Of a stretch of DNA of 64,000 nucleotides, positions 11,793 to 45,100 are shown in pieces; within the stretch, counting starts at the first letter, position 1, and each line of letters begins with the position of its first letter. The stretch spans positions 9,300,001 through 9,364,000 of the forward strand of contig NC_085847.1 of assembly GCF_035594765.1 (NCBI RefSeq), in the 5' to 3' direction. Under the pieces are notes generated by a model that searched no databases, had not been told where the DNA came from, and saw only the letters and a program-made list of their open reading frames with translations. This stretch comes from Anolis carolinensis. Lineage: Eukaryota. The translations under genes were made by a program, and so were the position numbers.

Positions 11793-22162
<10,370 letters not shown>

Positions 22163-25064: not shown

Positions 25065-26972
25065 TTAATCTCCTTGGTTAGTTCCACAAAGGGTTACGGA
25101 TGATGTGGTGTGATGGAAGAATGGCAAGTCGCTTCCACTTTTTGCGAGGTGCCTCTTGCCAGGGAGGTGTTGGTATGTATCGGCTGGCACAGCGTTTGGG
25201 AAAGAAGAGCCAGGTTCCTATTGGTTAAAATTAAACAGGAACAATTCAGCTTTTTTTCCAGGGTGATATGTGATACTTTTTCTGGCCTCCCAAATCTCTA
25301 GCTACAAAATGTGAACATACTGGCTAGGAGTTGTTGGAGCTTGATTTGATAATTCCCAAATTCTACTTATGCTAAAGTCTTTATATACCATATATGGAAA
25401 TCTATTGAACACAACATGATCTATTTCTGCGTTGATAGGCTTCTATGAATCATTGAATCTATGATTCTATGCTTGCACTATCAAACTAACCATGTCGATT
25501 CTATGGATTTTGGGGCCACTTCCTTTTGTTACATGATGGTCCTTTCTTTGCCTTTAACGTCACATTTTAGGTCCCCCAGATTTTAAGCTTACTTTGCAAA
25601 ACTTTGGTGGAAATTCATTTCGGACTCTTGCGTGGAAGGTGGCATCTTGTCCGGTGGACAATTTGGTCTCGAGGCTTTTCCAGCTGCTCTTGCTCAATGC
25701 CAGAGATGAAAACTGGACATCCGAGAACTCTGCTTGAAAGTTTCCTTTTCCGATAGAGGAGGACCCACAACTAGTGGTGACTTTGGGGGCTAATTTCTTT
25801 ATCATCAGAAGGTGAAAATGCCTTTTTTCCTCATCCAGTTGCCTGCATCTGCTCCGCTTTTGGTGTTCAAGTCTCCCTAGAGTCTTGGGATGCAAGTGAG
25901 AGGCAGAAAAATATTGACAGAAGGCATACCGTATATACTCGAGTATAAACCGACCCGAATATAAGCCAAGGCACCTAATTTTACCACAAAAAAACTGGGA
26001 AAACATTGACTCCAGTATAAGCCGAGAGTGGTAAATTTCAGAAATAAAAATGGATACCAATAAAATTACACAAGTTGAGGCATCAGAAGGTGAAATGTTT
26101 TTGAATATTTACATAAAACTGTAATTTAAGATAAGGCTTTCCAACTTTGATTAAGTTATCATTATTATCTTCAATGTAAATGTGCTTATGTATCCTTTTT
26201 AATAATAATAGAGTAAAATAATAAATGTAATAAGACTAACAAATACAGTCAAATAATAAATGCAATAATAGAGTAAAATAATAAATGTAATAACAATAAT
26301 AATATTAGAGTGAAATAATAAATGTATTAATAGTACTTATTTATTTATTTATTAGCGACATTTATATCCCGCCCTTCTCACCCCGAAGAGGACTCAAGGC
26401 GGTTTACAAGTATATATACATACAATATATTATATTATACGACTATATTGCAATATTATTAGTAATATTGCATGTAATATAAATATACAATTATAATAGT
26501 GAATTATAATTATGATTACATTGTATTACATCATAATAATATTATTAATATTACATGTATACAGTATGCAATATAATCTAATATTAGTATAGTATAATAT
26601 TATATATTATATCATTAAATTGATACAATAATAGTAATAAAAATAGAGTAAAATAATAAATATAATAATACCAATAATAATAAATATACCATATATACTC
26701 GAGTATAAGTCAACACGAATATAAGCCAACCAGGACCCTCACCCGAGTATAAGCTATGGGGGGCCTTTTTCAGTCCTAAAACAGGGCTGAAAAACTAGGC
26801 TTATACTCGAGTATATACAGGACTTTCCCCAAAGTTTGTTGGAACACAAACAGCTTGGATTGTGCACTCTTGGGAAGACGAAAGGATAACGAAATGGGTC
26901 TGCTTACCGCAGCGAGGTCCCTCTGCTCCTTGAGAAACTTATTCCTCACCCGCTGCGGTGCTGTCAGCAGAT
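25065..26972 (-). CDS. Candidate uncharacterised spliced gene with a predicted N-terminal coiled coil; 5' end unresolved
   Basis: Three minus-strand exons 26908-26972, 25593-25883 and 25065-25217 (TAA). Splice sites are CCTTTCAG/..GCG|GTAAGC, CCCAAG/..AAA|GTAAGC and CCAATAG/, with matching phase-0 junctions. Peptide LLTAPQRVRNKFLKEQRDLAA/TLGRLEHQKRSRCRQLDEEKRHFHLLMIKKL...PPKFCK/EPGSSFP...TNQGD*. An in-frame ATG lies at 27051. Confidence 0.55.
25929..26820. mobile_element. Tc2/pogo-like MITE with a nested L2-tail repeat (~26335-26630)
   Basis: Same TIRs; the interior is interrupted by a CCCGCCCTTCTCACCCCGAAG element. Confidence 0.75.
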
Positions 26973-27492
26973 CTGAAAGGCAGAAGGAATAGAAAGAGTC
27001 ATTCTTATATAAGAATGACAGGCAGATCCTTGGATCATTCCCCACTGCCATTTCTATGTATTTTTTTTTCTACGCAGTTGGATGTCACTCTCCTTGCAAT
27101 ATCTCCAGGAACGTGGTGGGAAAAGCAGCTGACTTGATGCAATCTTTTGGCACAGGAGCAAAAGAAACGTTGATGTCGATGCCGGGGTCGAGGGGAGGAG
27201 GATATCCTGTTCTACTGGTTGAATCCAGTTGAATGCATCCCGGCCTGCTATGGCATCGCTAAACATTGACCAAGACTTTGAGCGAGGTGAGAGCAGTGAA
27301 CCTTCATCTTCCAGAACAAATCCTTGATCATTTCATCTTCTTTCCCCCCCCCCCCCGCCCCCTCCTTAAGTATGTTGGCCGTAGAAGACATCTCTGAACC
27401 GTTTAAAACTGACTGTGTCAATTGGGAGTGATCATTATAATACAGTAGAGTCTCACTCATCCAACATAAATGGGACAGCAGAACGTTGGATG

Positions 27493-27544
<52 letters not shown>

Positions 27545-27545
<1 letters not shown>

Positions 27546-28260
27546 CCTTGCAGCCCAGGAGCAAGCCATCAGAACAAATACAATTAAGGCCAAGATCGAA
27601 AAATCAGCTGTTGACCCAAAATGCAGACTGTGCAAGGAAACCGACAAACCATTGATCATCTCCTCAGCTGCTGTAATAAAATTGCACAGACAGACTACAA
27701 ACAGAGGCACAACTCTGTGGCCCAAATGATTCATTGGAACGTATGCCTCAAGTACAACCTCCCAGCAGAAAAGAACTGGTGGGATCACAAACCTGCAAAA
27801 GTATTGGAAAATGAGCATGCAAAGAGACTGTGGGACTTCCGAATCCAGACTGACAAAGTTCTGGAACAGAACACACCAGACATCACAGTTGTGGAAAAGA
27901 AAAAGGTTTGGATCATTGAAGTTGCCATCCCAGGTGACCGTCGCATTGATGAAAAACAACAGGAAAAACTCAGCCGCTATCAGGACCTCAAGATTGAACT
28001 TCAAAGACTCTGGCAGAAACCAGTGCAGGTGGTCCCGGTGGTGATGGGCACACTGGGTGCCGTGCCAAAAGATCTCAGCTGGTATTTGGAAACAATAGAC
28101 ATTGACAAAATTACGATCTGCCAGCTGCAAAAGGCCACCCTGCTGGGATCTGTGCGCATCATCTGAAAATACATCACACAGTCCTAGACACTTGGGAAGT
28201 GTTCGACTTGTGGTTTTGTGATACGAAATCCAGCGTATCTATCTTGTTTGCTGTGTCATA

Positions 28261-28262
<2 letters not shown>
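27545..28262 (+). mobile_element. R4/Dong-type (restriction-like endonuclease) non-LTR retrotransposon, 5'-truncated and frameshifted
   Basis: ILAAQEQAIRT...KCRLCKETD, then a frameshift, then TIDHLLSCC...YKQRHNSVA...LWDFRIQTD...PDITVV...IIEVAIP...EKLSRYQDL (CCHC knuckle, RHN and PD-(D/E)xK motifs). Embedded in (AAT)n on both sides. 3'-end fragments at ~1209-1370 and ~35312-35370 also abut (ATT)n. Confidence 0.8.
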
Positions 28263-28322
<60 letters not shown>

Positions 28323-30696: not shown

Positions 30697-30781
30697 CAAG
30701 GGAGCGCGCGGCAAGATGGCGGCGACTGTGGCGCCTCTTTAGCTGCTGAATGGCCTGTTTTCGCGGCGTTTCTCCCTGGCT

Positions 30782-33700
30782 ATGCCTGTCAGGCGGCTCT
30801 TATGGGGGCTCGTGCTTCTTTCCACGGCTCGGGCCCACGATGGGATTCCCGGTGGGTAGTAAACGACGGCGTCTGAGGCGAGAAGCCGCGCAGGGAGTTG
30901 TAGTTCGACAAGGCCCTTCGCCTTCCCAATCCACAACACTCAGGATGCCCTTGCAGTCAACCGTGAGAGCTAAACTGTTGTCAAATTGCATTACAGTAGA
31001 GTCTCACGTATCCAACACTCGCTTATCCAAGGTTCTGGATTATCCAACGCATTTTTGTAGTCAATGTTTTCAATATATTGTGATATTTTGGTGCTAAATT
31101 CGTAAATACAGGAATTACTACATAGCATTACTGTGTATTGAACTACTTTTTCTGTCAAGTTTGTTATTAAACATGATGTTTTGGTGCTTAATTTGTAAAA
31201 TCATAACCGAATTTGATGTGTAATAGGCTTTTCCTTAATCCCTTCTTATTATCCAACATATGCGCTTATCCAACGTTCTACCGGCCCATTACTAGATGGA
31301 GATTGGTGCCAAATGTTGTAAACATATTTTTCCCCCCACCCGGTTCACAAACAACTTTGTTCTTCATGGATTTTAACATAACACATCTTGTATTGATTTC
31401 TATTTTCTGTTTTTAGGCTTTCGGCCTCCTTTTATTTACATGTCTGGAACGGTTGTCACCTCTTCTTTGGTCAGTGTTCGCGCAGATGTTTTCTCTATTG
31501 CGGTAACAGACAGCGAAACAGGTAGGGTTTTTCTTTTCTAGATCGCACATGAAATGATCAGACCACTTTTTTGTCACTAAGACCATTGAATAGTTCTACC
31601 AGTAAAATGGTATTCTACCATCCCTAGCAGTGACTAAGGCCCCTTCCACACAGCCATATAACCCAGAATATCAAGGCGGAAAATCCCGCAATATCTGCTT
31701 TGGACTGGGTTATCTGAGTCCACACTGCCATATATCCCAGTTCAAAGCAGATAATGCGGGATTTTATTCAGCTGTGTGGAAGTGGCCTAAGAGGAAACTT
31801 CTGGTTGTTTACCTAAGCAGCAAAACATTTTGGGCTCATCCTAATTTGATTTTTGCTCTTTTCTAGGAATGTTGCCCCCTTCAGACTGTAGTGGAATGAA
31901 CAAAACTGGTGACTGGACTCTAAATGTCACGTATCAAGAGGTTCGCAAAAATTGATTCTGCCAGTGAAATATCTTAACAGAGATGCTCCTTCTTTGAGCG
32001 TAATGCCATACATTTCCCAAGTTTGGGATTTATCTTCACCTGATATCTCTAAGAGGATTTTGTAGTTTCTGTCCTTCATGTAGGTGAAATATAATATACT
32101 GAAAACTAATGTATATTGATGTATTTAAACTATGTTTAATTATGTTAAAATACATCTCAAGCTGTAAGGAGATGTAGGTAAGTAATACAACATTATTGTT
32201 ATTGTTATTATTATTATTATTATTTTATATAGATTTTTTTCAGAATACAAAACAATATTTTCTATAGTGGCTGGAGGACAAACAGAACTCTGTATATAGA
32301 TGACACAGAATTTTGTGTGGTTAGTCTACGAGGGAGAAAAGCCCCAATAAAATATTGCTCTTCTATATCCTTCATATTATTTTTTAAAAATTAAACATGT
32401 AAGCAAATTGAAAAAAATGTACATGCACGTACACTACACAACATTAAATTGTAACATGTATGGATCTTTTTGCTACAAAGAAAAGGTTGAGACATCAGCC
32501 AAAAGTTATGCAAATATGGAGACATAACATAGCTCATGTAAACATAGCTATGGATAGTCAAGCCAGAAACCAAAATGAACAGTTGATATCATAATATAAT
32601 GGAAAATCTTCTTTTGGGGAAAAAGTCATAATTTTAATGATCAGGACAAACCTGTTTTCATTGCTCCCCCCCCCCCCAACAAGTTGTATTGATTTCTAAT
32701 TAATGCTTTGTAAAACGGTGTGTTTCAGAATGTTTCCAGAGTGACAGTGCGCTTAACCAGAAACCTACAACTATGCACTTCAAATGCCACAAATTGCTGC
32801 ATGGAGGCCCTTTGTGTGGTGGAGGCTTTGCAGGTCTCAGCTTGTTGGGACTCAGTGGTGGTGGCCCGCCTCTTGATCCAAGCTGAAATATATGCTAATA
32901 CATCCTCACAAAATGTGTCAGGAAAAGTGGAAGGTATTCCAGCTTTTCTTGCTTGATGTTGATGTTTTTCAGCTCATTTATATGAGTAACACAATGATAG
33001 TGATCCAGTGCTTTTCCACAGTCTTTAGATATGACAACTTCACCACTTCACTGTTTGCTTGTGTTGCCTGGCATTTGTCTACATGAGTTAAGCATCATAT
33101 AAACAAAGGCAGCAGATTTTTGAACGTATGATATATGTATCTGTGTGTTCAGGTGTTGTTGTGGGTCGTCCTATATAAAAGGACACATTATACTCCTCTC
33201 TGATGCTGTCCTTGGTGAGCCCAAGCCATGCAACGTTCAGGCTGGAGGGCAAGGTTTGCTTTCTATCTCTCCCAATGGGCATCAAATGTGATTTTTGCTG
33301 TTAGATACATATGTCGGAGGGAGGAGTTGCCTAAATTTCTAGCCCTTAAGTTCTTTCTTTTTTTCAATAGAGAAAGAAAGAGTGATCCCCAATCAAGTGT
33401 TTCAGCCTCTGGGTTCTTGTCCCTGCAATCTCACTGCAGGAGCCTGTGATGTCCTTTGCTGCTGTGATCAGGTACCAATTCTGTGTTTGGCTTCTGAAAC
33501 CTATGCCTACAAAATGATCTGTATATTTTTCCTCACGCTTAGAAGAATGTCATGATTACCACCCAGTAGTTTGTTTTCCTGGGCCTTCTGTTAACAATAA
33601 TTTCTAAGAAGGAAAATATACAACAGAGACTGGAACTTTCTGTCTCAGAGCTGCAATCACTCCCGAAGGGATTTTCTCTGTTACTATTTATTTATTTATT

Positions 33701-41779: not shown

Positions 41780-42147
41780 TCTCGCTCTTGGACTTCAACT
41801 CCCGGCAGCCTCAGCGGCGTTGTCCAATGTGCAGGCATTCTGGGAGTTGAAGTCCACAACCTATTAGGAAGCAGTGGGAGAGGAAAGGCTGGCCGGGAGT
41901 GCTTGGTTCTCCAACCGGAAGTGGGGGCGTGGGGCCGCTCTAGGCACTTGGCGCAACTCGCGAGCGCCTCGGCCGGTCTGTCAGGGCGAACCGGAAGCGG
42001 CTGAGGGAGGGGGGCGGGCGAGCGAGCGGGCGGGCGTTGCTTCAGGGCTTCTCTCCATGGCCCGGCGGTCCGTCAGAGGAGCAGCGGCAGCGGGAGGAAA
42101 AGGACGGCCGAGGAGCCCGCCGTCTTGCCGTTCGAAGCCGGCCCGCC
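41780..42147 (+). promoter_or_regulatory. CpG-island promoter/5'UTR of ATP6V0A2
   Basis: CpG-rich. ETS sites ACCGGAAGT (~41914) and ACCGGAAGC (~41990), a CTCGCGAG palindrome (~41957), GC boxes, and a Kozak context GCCCGCC-ATG at 42148. Confidence 0.75.
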
Positions 42148-45100
42148 ATGAGCTCGTCGTTCCGGAGCGAGCCCATGTGCCTGGCACAGCTCTTTCTTCA
42201 GGCGGGCTCGGCCTACGAGTGCCTCAGCGCCCTGGGCGAGCGCGGCCTGGCCCAATTCCGAGACGTGAGTTGACGCCAGGCGGCGGGGGGGGGGGGGCGG
42301 GGGCGTTCTGGGAGTTCTGTCACCTCCTCTGCCTTAGAGCCCTCCCCGAACTACAACTCCCACAACAGTGGCGCCCTGGCCCTTCAAGGGGCGTCTATCC
42401 ATGGATCCTCCCGTGTCTGCTGACGTGTGCAGCGGCCCAAGAAGCCACTTCCAGCGCCTCTCTTCTGCCCTTTCACTTGCGTAGTTAATAATAATAACCA
42501 TAATAGCTTTCTTTATAGCCCGCCCCATCTCCCTCAGACAGTGGTCCCCAGATGTTTTTGGCCTACAACTCCCAGAAATCCCAGCTGTTAGGGTTTAGAA
42601 GGCCAAAAACATCTGGGGACCCCCAGGCTGAGAACCACTGCCCTAAAATGACTCTGGGCAGCCTACAAGGCCACAATAGTGCCACACAGAACATATCAAA
42701 TGTAACAACAATTAGCCAGAATAAAAAAAAACAGTGCCAGTATAACATAAAATAACAACATAGGTAAAGGTAAAGGTTTCCCCTGATGTTAAGTCTAGTT
42801 GTGTCCAACTCTGGGGGTTGGTGCTCATCTCCATTTCTAAGCCAAAGAGCCGGCGTTGTCTGTAGACACCTCCAAGGTCATGTAGCCACTGCCATGACTG
42901 CATGGAGTGCCGTTACCTTCCCACCAGAGCTGTACCTATTGATCTACTCACATGTACATGTTTTCGAACTGCTAGGTTGGCAGGAACTGGGGCTAACAGC
43001 GGAAGCTCACCCCGCGCCCGGGATTTGAACCTGGGACCTTTTGGTCCACAAGTTCAGCAGCTCAGTGCTTTAACACACTGTGCCACCGGGGGTCCCAAAT
43101 AACAATATATGAGGATTAAAATGAAACACATCAATCAAAATGAAATAACCACAAGCATTGATTATAATTAAAAGCGAGCTATACAAACCAAGTTTAGCAT
43201 CCCAGCCACAGATAAAAAATATCCACATTAAAATGTCAGGGTAAAACTTCATTCTGTTTAGGTCCGCCAATTTTAGATGTTACATTAACCATTGTCAAAG
43301 GCCGGTTTGAAAAGCCGTGTCTTCAGCTCCCTCAGACAGGATTGAATTGTGGCGGCTTGCCTGATCTCCCTGTGGAGGTTGTTCCAAAGCCGGGGGGCCA
43401 CAACCAAGAAGGCCCTCTCCCTTGTCCCCACCAACTGCTTTCAAAGTAAGGACTGGGAGCTGTACTTTGGCGAGGGACCAGCACTCATTGGCAGAGAAGG
43501 CTCAAGACCTTGTCAAACGGGATTCCATCGGATTGAGACATCCCTGCTAAAGTAGTGTCAAACTGCATTGGTGTCGATGCAGCTAAAGTCTCAGAAATCC
43601 CAGCAGGAAGCGGCCCAGCCTCTTTTTGAATATACCCAGAGGCCTCACCATCTTCAACTGACACCGTGATCGTGACTGTCTGTTATGAATGGGATTCAGG
43701 ACAAAAGAACTTTTGTGTCTTAATTATGTCTGTCCTCTTTCTTGTGCTTTCCGATGCTGCTCCAAAAGTTGCTTCCATTGCTTCTTTTGGAATGACCAGG
43801 GTCCGTAATGTGCCCTGGTGAATAGTAGTTTGAGTGAGAAATGTATAGAGTCTCCTTATCATATTTCTTTCTTTGTTTTATGCTTCAGTCATTCCTGAAG
43901 AATGTCCGTCCTGTTTTGAGTTCTTCTCACTAAGATATGGAATTGTGCTTCAGGCGTTTAAGAAAGATAATTTGCATGTTTTATAGATGATACGTCTATC
44001 GATATTGGGATATTGTCCAATTCTTGTTTTAGATCAATCTTCCCAAAATTGCACAATAAATACAGAGAATCTCCTGTCTCACTTGGGAGGTTTGGCCTTT
44101 GGACTAATTTCAGTTGGAGGCTCCATTGATATGAATAGCGTAAATTATTCTTATTGATAATAATATATTCATTATTGTGCTTTTATCTTGCAATCAAGAC
44201 ACATTGGCCCTTAACATATTGTATGTCAGATGGAATAGAATTACTGACTTCAGCTTTTTCTTTAACCATATACTCGATGTGCAATGGTGATACATAAAAC
44301 CTTAATAATAATAATAATAAGAAGAAGAATACTTTATTTTTCTATCCCGCCACCATCTCCCCGGAGGGACTAACATGGGGACACAGTCCAAAACAGAGAC
44401 AAAATATAAACAGTTAAAACACATGGCAAAAATTAAGAACAAAGATACCACAGTCAAATAAAAAGATCGATTAAAAACATTGCATATAATAAGACATAAA
44501 TAACCAAGCAAATGAAGTAATAATACTTACCACTTGAATGTCCAAAGATCTATATTGTTCTTTAACATCTGTATGATGCTAGATGCTACTTAACATCTGT
44601 ATGATACTAAAATTTGTTTCTGGCCTTGCTTTCTCTTTCAGTTTTGCTGACTGGAATATTAACTGTAAATCTGATGAGTCTAGTTTTTCTGATTGATATT
44701 AGCTGCCTTGAACGTTCACATGAATTACAAAATGGCATAAAGTAGCTTCATTATATACTGTATTAAATACTACTGTATTATTAATAGAGGATAGCTATCT
44801 CTGTCAGCACCTTCTTTCCAAGTCAGAATTTTCAGAAACTGCTAAATCAAAGTAAAAGACTATGGCATGAGAGGCAATGTTTCAGTTAGATGCCTCTTGG
44901 AAGCTATAAGAGGTGCATTAAGGCAGTTATCGCTTCTTCTAAAATAGAACCTATAGCACCTGGTGTTTGTTGCCAGTCTCCCATTCAAGTACAAACCAGT
45001 CTGATCAGACAGGATCTGGTGTCTTTAGGCAATTCAGAATCCCATAAATTATGTACATTTTGTTTTCCATCTTTCTAGCTCAATCCAAGCACCAGTGTGT

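What the first reader, a model, noticed from the sequence alone, without database searches (positions are those of the whole stretch)
25065..27051. Hidden minus-strand spliced gene between GTF2H3 and TCTN2
Seen in sequence: three non-repeat exons (26908-26972, 25593-25883, 25065-25217) with AG acceptors, two GTAAGC donors and matching phases. They splice into a stop-free frame of ~168 codons, or 195 aa if the in-frame good-Kozak ATG at 27051 is used. The junction-spanning segment RNKFLKEQRDLAA/TLGRLEHQKRSRCRQLDEEKRHFHLLMIKKL looks like a charged coiled coil, followed by a Ser-rich low-complexity tail. Established: I know of no protein-coding gene at this position in the human DDX55-EIF2B1-GTF2H3-TCTN2-ATP6V0A2-DNAH10 block. 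Inference: a lineage-restricted or mammal-lost gene. The LxxxLxRL-x10-LxxExR spacing reminds me of the CCDC190 N-terminus (from memory, unverified). The strong acceptor before 26972 suggests a further unidentified upstream exon.
Basis: partly seen in the sequence, partly recalled or inferred. Interest (0 to 1): 0.75.

Follow-up and report, generated by a model that had tools for sequence, protein, structure and literature searches.

The report
Unnamed ancient vertebrate gene beside TCTN2
The three minus-strand exons are a real, selectively constrained protein-coding gene: the lizard copy of an unnamed vertebrate family (lamprey to squamates) with no annotated relative in mammals, birds, turtles or crocodilians and no known function.

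Summary
Exons 25883-25593 and 25217-25065 are as described. The first block is not an internal exon starting at 26972. It is the first coding exon, 27051-26908, 48 codons from the ATG, so the 195-codon reading is the right one. No upstream coding exon is needed.

Annotated "uncharacterized protein LOC…" orthologues exist in seven other squamates and in frogs, a salamander, lungfish, bichir, gar, sturgeon, basal teleosts, shark, skate and lamprey. None was found in mammals, birds, turtles or crocodilians.

In Elgaria and Paroedura the gene sits between TCTN2 (head-to-head) and GTF2H3 (tail-to-tail), as in the window. In a horn shark it is also tail-to-tail with GTF2H3.

Intron positions and GT/AG sites are conserved. 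Pairwise dN/dS for exons 1-2 is 0.17-0.25 (p ≤ 6e-9).

The family has no Pfam, PDB or fold match. A model gives an N-terminal three-helix unit (about 80 residues, pLDDT above 90 over the long helix) and a disordered Ser-rich tail.

The CCDC190 resemblance found no support. RNA evidence for this genome could not be obtained. Function is inferred only: probably a small coiled-coil adaptor.

The parts
26908..27051 (-). Coding part of exon 1: ATG at 27051, 48 codons, donor GTAAGC at 26907-26902. It encodes helices 1-2 and the start of the long helix of the conserved domain.
   Evidence: ORF 26776..27051; 83% and 75% identity to Sceloporus and Varanus. HMM E = 4e-25, profile positions 1-47. Elgaria exon 1 is also exactly 144 nt with a GT donor.
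27052..27241 (-). Probable 5' UTR, contiguous with exon 1. The transcription start was not determined.
   Evidence: the N-terminal extension of the Sceloporus isoform X2 model maps by tblastn to contiguous window sequence 27241-27146 and 27162-26914, in shifted frames; in-frame TAG upstream of the ATG.
26973..26990 (-). It is internal to exon 1 and is a by-product of the codons for the conserved FYSFCLSD.
25884..26907 (-). Intron 1 (1024 nt, phase 0), filled with AT-rich and dispersed repeat sequence.
   Evidence: the repeat signature has 13 copies in the window, 3 of them in this intron; the same intron position occurs in Elgaria, Paroedura and Xenopus.
25593..25883 (-). Coding exon 2: 97 codons, phase 0/0, donor GTAAGC. 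It encodes the rest of the long helix (…RQLDEEKRHFHLLMIKKLAP) and the Ser-rich region ending in PKFCK.
   Evidence: 70% identity to Sceloporus, E = 1e-31. HMM E = 4e-25, profile positions 48-137. Elgaria exon 2 ends at the same PKFCK with the same GTAAGC donor.
25218..25592 (-). Intron 2 (375 nt, phase 0).
   Evidence: The Varanus and Paroedura models read through this donor. The Sceloporus, Elgaria and Sphaerodactylus proteins continue after FCK with sequence that resembles window exon 3 (read by eye); the splice itself was mapped only for Elgaria.
25065..25217 (-). Coding exon 3: 50 codons plus TAA. It carries the weakly conserved C-terminal motif (…KRHLAKSGSDLPFF…). Whether a 3' splice to a further exon occurs, as in the Elgaria model, is unknown.
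   Evidence: tblastn of Elgaria residues 151-171 maps to 25199-25137; third-best segment of 2744, E = 0.78, collinear at profile positions 152-187; dN/dS about 0.95 over 28 codons, so constraint on this exon is not shown.
20564..20873 (+). Context: late coding exons of GTF2H3 (tail-to-tail neighbour).
   Evidence: collinear match to the Elgaria Tfb4 gene.
30743..30856 (+). Context: first coding exon of TCTN2 (head-to-head neighbour, about 3.5 kb from the new gene's 5' end).
   Evidence: match to the 5' end of the Elgaria TCTN2 gene.

Best explanation
The locus is an intact three-coding-exon gene on the minus strand: 27051-26908, 25883-25593 and 25217-25065, for 48 + 97 + 50 codons. It is the orthologue of an unnamed, uncharacterised vertebrate gene family, for example Sceloporus undulatus LOC121916494, Elgaria LOC134410797, Xenopus laevis LOC108705565 and Petromyzon LOC116957776.

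Shown here: homology, conserved exon structure, conserved position next to GTF2H3 and TCTN2, and purifying selection on exons 1-2.

Inferred, at roughly 40% confidence for the mechanism: the product is a small non-enzymatic adaptor or regulator. Its conserved N-terminal unit of about 80 residues (two short helices packed before a roughly 47-residue helix) would pair with itself or with a conserved partner as a coiled coil. The rest is a disordered Ser-rich tail. That tail probably carries phosphorylation sites and a short C-terminal linear motif, with consensus LL-T-R-S-E-S-C-L/F-P in fishes and amphibians and LAKSGSDLPFF here.
For: Homologues:
- word searches found orthologues in 7 squamate and frog species, E = 1e-31 to 1e-90.
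- a profile search of 1.84 bn representatives gave 33 hits with a sharp cut-off. The named ones are all 'uncharacterized' or 'hypothetical', apart from the misnamed Varanus entry, and run from lamprey to squamates. A few come from unnamed Logan contigs.
- a 27-sequence profile gave 34 hits and nothing between E = 3e-11 and 1.

The window's copy:
- exon 1 peptide is 83% and 75% identical to Sceloporus and Varanus.
- the family HMM hits only these three window segments, collinearly.
- By eye, the window's exon peptides carry every invariant and nearly invariant residue listed for family alignment A5.

Synteny:
- the order TCTN2 | gene | GTF2H3 is identical in Elgaria and Paroedura.
- tail-to-tail with GTF2H3 in a horn shark.
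- next to EIF2B1 in Xenopus laevis.

Structure and selection:
- same intron positions and GT/AG sites.
- Nei-Gojobori dN/dS is 0.17-0.25 in all three squamate pairs (Fisher p = 6e-9 to 1e-13).
- a 1271-nt frog Logan contig carries the full ORF without interruption, so the family is transcribed and spliced in a frog.
- the AlphaFold model has helices 7-17, 19-30 and 33-79, with pLDDT above 90 over residues 30-80 and the rest disordered.
Against: There is no RNA evidence for this genome.

Exon 3 shows no measurable constraint (dN/dS about 0.95 over 28 codons; HMM E = 0.78). Annotated C-termini also differ among squamates, by read-through of the exon 2 donor in the Varanus and Paroedura models and a fourth exon in Elgaria. 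The 3' end of the coding sequence is therefore uncertain.

The window lineage evolves about 3 times faster than Elgaria at both dN and dS (derived).

The mechanistic reading rests only on a predicted monomer model and motif inspection. No partner, localisation or expression pattern is known. No Pfam, PDB or fold relative gives functional transfer.
Confidence: 0.85

Rival explanations
1. The window's copy is a recently inactivated or non-translated relic, such as a lncRNA or unitary pseudogene in the making, of an otherwise real family.
For: No protein from this genome was found in the protein collections. dN on the window branch is faster than on the Elgaria branch. Exon 3 is unconstrained. 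No RNA data were obtained.
Against: The frame is open across all three exons, and all splice sites, the start codon and its Kozak context are intact. By eye, all invariant family residues are retained. dS is raised on the window branch as much as dN, so exon 1 dN/dS on that branch stays near 0.2.
Confidence: 0.08
2. It is a divergent paralogue of CCDC190.
For: Both proteins are small with an N-terminal coiled coil.
Against: No CCDC190, and no other named protein except the misnamed Varanus entry, appeared among the 33 hits at E ≤ 1e-3 in 1.84 bn representatives. None appeared among the 34 hits at E ≤ 1 with the 27-sequence profile. Pfam scans of all 27 members at E ≤ 10 show no shared family.
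Confidence: 0.03
3. It is a chance ORF or TE-derived exons.
For: Intron 1 and the flanks are full of dispersed repeats, and a retroelement ORF lies at 27621-28166.
Against: The exons are single-copy in the window. They have syntenic single-copy orthologues from shark to gecko and dN/dS well below 1. The repeats are confined to the intron.
Confidence: 0.01

Closest known systems
Sceloporus undulatus LOC121916494 (uncharacterized protein, isoform X2; P0001) and the other squamate models (Elgaria LOC134410797, Paroedura LOC143822915, Podarcis, Lerista, Sphaerodactylus, Liasis, Varanus)
   Same: These are orthologues. Identity to the window's exons 1 and 2 is 83% and 70% for Sceloporus. Exon 1 is the same 48 codons, the intron positions match, and in Elgaria and Paroedura the position between TCTN2 and GTF2H3 is the same.
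   Different: The C-termini differ between models, by read-through of the exon 2 donor, a short exon 3 stop in Sceloporus and an extra exon in Elgaria. The Sceloporus X2 model starts 82 codons upstream, in what is 5' UTR here and is blocked by a stop. The Varanus entry is misnamed 'Succinate--CoA ligase subunit beta'.
Xenopus laevis LOC108705565, Lepisosteus LOC107079560, Protopterus LOC122799471, Heterodontus and Petromyzon LOC116957776 (uncharacterized proteins)
   Same: They share the N-terminal domain of about 80 residues (…LSFLYKNDPFYSLCLSDLM-APQ-V-N-FLKEQ…RQLNEEK-QF-LLM--KLAP). Xenopus has the same three-coding-exon layout. Linkage to GTF2H3 (shark) or EIF2B1 (Xenopus) is kept.
   Different: Fish and amphibian proteins keep a Cys-containing C-terminal motif (C-x-C-G … LL-x-RSESC-x-P). 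In squamates, including the window, this has lost its cysteines. The gar copy lies next to a Serinc gene instead.
CCDC190
   Same: A small protein with an N-terminal charged helix. This is resemblance by memory only.
   Different: No detectable sequence relationship in any search run here.

Membership tests
Unnamed vertebrate family (LOC121916494 / LOC108705565-like) | Significant match to the family profile over the N-terminal domain of about 80 residues, with the invariant residues retained | tested here: met
   exon 1 E = 4e-25 (profile positions 1-47) and exon 2 E = 4e-25 (positions 48-137). By eye, the window peptides carry the residues that one search lists as invariant or nearly invariant (L14, D18, Y21, C24, D27, A31, F39, Q43, L46, L64, E66, E67, F71, M75, L79).
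Unnamed vertebrate family (LOC121916494 / LOC108705565-like) | Same exon-intron structure: phase-0 intron after codon 46-48, and a second intron after the PKFCK motif in squamates | tested here: met
   Elgaria, Paroedura and Xenopus have intron 1 at the same place. Elgaria has the same GTAAGC donor after PKFCK.
Unnamed vertebrate family (LOC121916494 / LOC108705565-like) | Orthologous genomic position (head-to-head with TCTN2, tail-to-tail with GTF2H3) | tested here: met
   Elgaria, Paroedura; shark, GTF2H3 side.
Unnamed vertebrate family (LOC121916494 / LOC108705565-like) | Purifying selection on the coding sequence | tested here: met
   dN/dS 0.17-0.25 for exons 1-2, p ≤ 6e-9. Exon 3 is not constrained.
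Unnamed vertebrate family (LOC121916494 / LOC108705565-like) | Transcription and splicing in this species | not testable with these tools
A spliced transcript is seen only in a frog relative.
CCDC190 | Detectable sequence homology to CCDC190 proteins or a CCDC190 Pfam model | tested here: not met
   no CCDC190 among any hits. A profile-profile test was not possible.

The most novel reading that the evidence does not exclude
This is a 'dark' protein family that predates the lamprey-gnathostome split. Its 80-residue helical domain has no Pfam, PDB or fold relative, and it has kept its place beside GTF2H3 since at least the shark-bony vertebrate ancestor. On this reading it was lost independently in mammals, in the turtle-archosaur lineage and in most teleosts. 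It would define a new domain family whose partner and role could be studied in Xenopus, salmon or lizards.
Probability: 0.6. Interest if true: 0.5.

Novelty: new member of a known kind. Interest (0 to 1): 0.4.

Why it matters
It adds a real protein-coding gene to a well-known syntenic block (DDX55-EIF2B1-GTF2H3-TCTN2-ATP6V0A2) in a genome where no protein model for it was found.

It also shows that the scattered 'uncharacterized LOC' models form one ancient vertebrate family. That family has a strongly conserved N-terminal domain, no Pfam entry and no literature found.

Genes kept for about 500 million years yet apparently dropped by mammals and birds are useful in two ways. They help date lineage-specific gene loss, and they point to functions that model mammals cannot reveal. 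The practical gain is modest: an annotation fix, plus a defined family, alignment and model for follow-up.

Tried and rejected
- All searches used single exons by reference or database orthologues, and dN/dS counts were summed per exon.
- Pfam scans of the exons, the orthologues and all 27 family members gave only scattered sub-threshold hits.
- The PDB sequence profile search gave no hit at E ≤ 10.
- Foldseek against PDB gave one row at E = 8.8.
- The ESM Atlas searches by features (best 0.81, DUF5528, at chance level) and by shape (TM ≤ 0.43) were uninformative.
- The look-up of encoding contigs had no record for the Sceloporus and Varanus proteins.
- Literature searches for 11 LOC numbers, one protein accession and two run accessions, and for TCTN2/GTF2H3 gene-loss wording, found 0 papers.
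- Earlier-findings look-ups returned nothing.
- Bacterial promoter/terminator and AATAAA scans were uninformative.
- Rejected readings: a TE-derived origin, a chance ORF, and an upstream coding exon.

Full report
**1. Observation**

- Block A ends at 26908 before GTAAGC.
- Block B, 25883-25593, is 97 codons between a pyrimidine-rich AG acceptor and a second GTAAGC donor.
- Block C, 25217-25065, is 50 codons plus TAA after an AG.
- Lengths of 144, 291 and 153 nt keep one frame throughout.

Everything below was done exon by exon, by reference, or with database orthologues.

**2. Correction of the 5' end**

Its 48 residues are 83% identical to the Sceloporus undulatus protein and 75% to the Varanus komodoensis protein.

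The pyrimidine tract plus AG is simply the coding sequence of the conserved peptide FYSFCLSD. The Elgaria orthologue's first coding exon is also exactly 144 nt from its ATG to a GT donor.

An in-frame TAG lies 21 nt upstream of the window's ATG, which has a purine at -3 and G at +4. The Sceloporus isoform X2 model's extra N-terminus maps to contiguous window DNA up to about 27241, but in shifted frames. That stretch is therefore 5' UTR here.

No upstream coding exon is required.

**3. What it is**

A word search with exon 2 found Sceloporus LOC121916494 (70% identity, E = 1e-31) and a Varanus protein. Searching with the Sceloporus protein added Elgaria, Podarcis, Lerista, Paroedura and a frog.

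A profile of the N-terminal 120 residues was scored against 1.84 billion representative proteins. It gave 33 hits with E ≤ 1e-3, 31 of them below 1e-10. By their source names the named hits come from:
- lamprey, horn shark and skate
- bichir, gar, Arapaima, Scleropages, Megalops, Conger, Aldrovandia, Engraulis, Coregonus and Dallia
- lungfish, a newt and several frogs
- squamates

A few further hits come from unnamed Logan contigs. A 27-sequence profile (A5) run through the word search added sturgeon, paddlefish, eels, salmon and clupeids. It found nothing between E = 3e-11 and 1.

Apart from the misnamed Varanus entry, every name is 'uncharacterized' or 'hypothetical'. No mammal, bird, turtle or crocodilian protein appears. 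Pfam has no model for the family. The PDB has no sequence relative. Twelve accessions and two run numbers occur in no searchable paper.

**4. Orthology by position and structure**

The window carries the following:
- the DDX55 3' end (+, about 1.5-2.0 kb)
- EIF2B1 (-, about 5.3-10.3 kb)
- a CpG-rich promoter (about 11.5-12 kb)
- GTF2H3 (+, about 14.3-20.9 kb)
- the new gene (-, 27.25-25.07 kb)
- TCTN2 (+, from about 30.74 kb)
- ATP6V0A2 exon 1 (+, about 42.1 kb)

In Elgaria multicarinata and Paroedura picta the orthologue lies head-to-head with TCTN2 and tail-to-tail with the Tfb4-domain gene GTF2H3. The window's GTF2H3 and TCTN2 exons map collinearly onto the Elgaria locus. In the horn shark the gene is again tail-to-tail with GTF2H3. 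In Xenopus laevis it lies 2.6 kb upstream of EIF2B1. In gar it lies next to a Serinc gene.

Intron 1 is at the same phase-0 position in Elgaria, Paroedura and Xenopus. The exon 2 donor after PKFCK is GTAAGC in both the window and Elgaria.

**5. Coding constraint**

Nei-Gojobori counts, made per exon and then summed, give dN/dS for exons 1-2 as follows:

| Pair | dN/dS | Fisher p |
|---|---|---|
| window-Elgaria | 0.25 | 6e-9 |
| window-Paroedura | 0.17 | 1e-13 |
| Elgaria-Paroedura | 0.21 | 4e-12 |

Exon 3 shows none: dN/dS is about 0.95 over 28 alignable codons. The family HMM matches it only weakly (E = 0.78), though it is the third-best of 2744 segments and collinear.

From the three distances, the window branch is about 3 times faster than the Elgaria branch in both dN and dS. 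Its own dN/dS for exon 1 stays near 0.2.

By eye, all residues listed as invariant or nearly invariant in A5 are present in the window's exon peptides. The exons are single-copy in the window. The repeats, a dispersed element with 13 signature copies in the window, are confined to intron 1 and the flanks.

**6. Expression**

A 1271-nt Logan contig from a ranid-like frog run carries the whole 198-codon ORF uninterrupted. This shows that the family is transcribed and spliced in at least one relative.

**7. How it probably works (inference)**

An AlphaFold model of the Sceloporus orthologue, built with the 27-sequence alignment, has helices at residues 7-17, 19-30 and 33-79. pLDDT is above 90 from about residue 30 to 80, and everything after residue 80 is disordered. 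No solved or predicted structure resembles it meaningfully.

Conservation along the long helix is not limited to a heptad core. Blocks such as RLRQLNEEKKQF are conserved on all faces. This suggests binding to a conserved partner rather than only self-association.

The tail is Ser-rich. In fishes and amphibians it ends in a C-x-C-G…LL-x-R-S-E-S-C-x-P motif. The L-x-R-x-x-S core of that motif looks like a basophilic-kinase site. In the window it reads LAKSGSDLPFF.

My best guess, at about 40%, is a small coiled-coil adaptor or regulator whose disordered tail is phospho-regulated. No enzymatic or membrane feature is present. I have no evidence on tissue, partner or process.

**8. Comparison with what is known, and novelty**

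The nearest known entities are the automatically predicted 'uncharacterized LOC' genes listed above. The window's gene passes every membership test I could run: profile match, exon structure, synteny and constraint.

The CCDC190 idea failed the only tests available. No CCDC190 appeared in any profile search, and there was no Pfam hit. A profile-profile comparison could not be run because no tool supplied a CCDC190 sequence.

The gene is therefore a new, apparently unannotated member of an already predicted but unstudied family. The family is old, with lamprey and gnathostomes both represented. Its absence from mammals, birds, turtles and crocodilians rests on protein collections only, not on genome searches.

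**9. Verdict**

This is a real gene with the exon model corrected at the 5' end. 'Mammal-lost' is supported. 'Lineage-restricted', 'upstream exon' and 'CCDC190-like' are not.

Interest is moderate: an annotation gain and a defined orphan domain family, with function still open.

Noticed in passing
window 27453-28166: A retroelement fragment lies just upstream of the gene's 5' end. The + strand ORF 27621-28166 (181 aa) looks to me like a retrotransposon ORF tail. It is flanked by long (AAT)n runs at about 27495-27545 and 28260-28320.
   Followed up: no
window 25926-25969, 26686-26729, 26798-26815, and 10 more sites (e.g. 2569, 16771, 17403, 51704): A dispersed repeat with the palindromic signature GGCTTATACTCGAGTATA has 13 copies in the window against 0 expected. 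Three of them lie in intron 1 of the new gene.
   Followed up: partly
P0002 (Varanus komodoensis protein, 194 aa): The Varanus orthologue is deposited under the name 'Succinate--CoA ligase [ADP-forming] subunit beta'. This is a misannotation. Its C-terminus also reads through the exon 2 donor into intron sequence.
   Followed up: partly
window 41874-42488 (+): ATP6V0A2 exon 1 sits in a GC-rich island at about 42 kb (GC 0.50). TCTN2 therefore occupies only about 11 kb (30.7-41 kb) in this genome.
   Followed up: no
L003:5850-6290 (Xenopus laevis, minus strand): Two window TCTN2 exon ORFs (36.2-36.7 kb) give weak tblastn hits about 4 kb upstream of the Xenopus orthologue, on the opposite strand, where no gene is called. 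This may be part of a TCTN2 gene head-to-head there too, or chance.
   Followed up: no
L007:11494-12051 (Paroedura) and L001:14413-14568 (Elgaria): Annotated C-termini of squamate orthologues disagree. The gecko model reads through the exon 2 donor, and Elgaria has a fourth coding exon with no counterpart in the window. The 3' end of this gene family's CDS is either evolutionarily labile or inconsistently modelled.
   Followed up: partly
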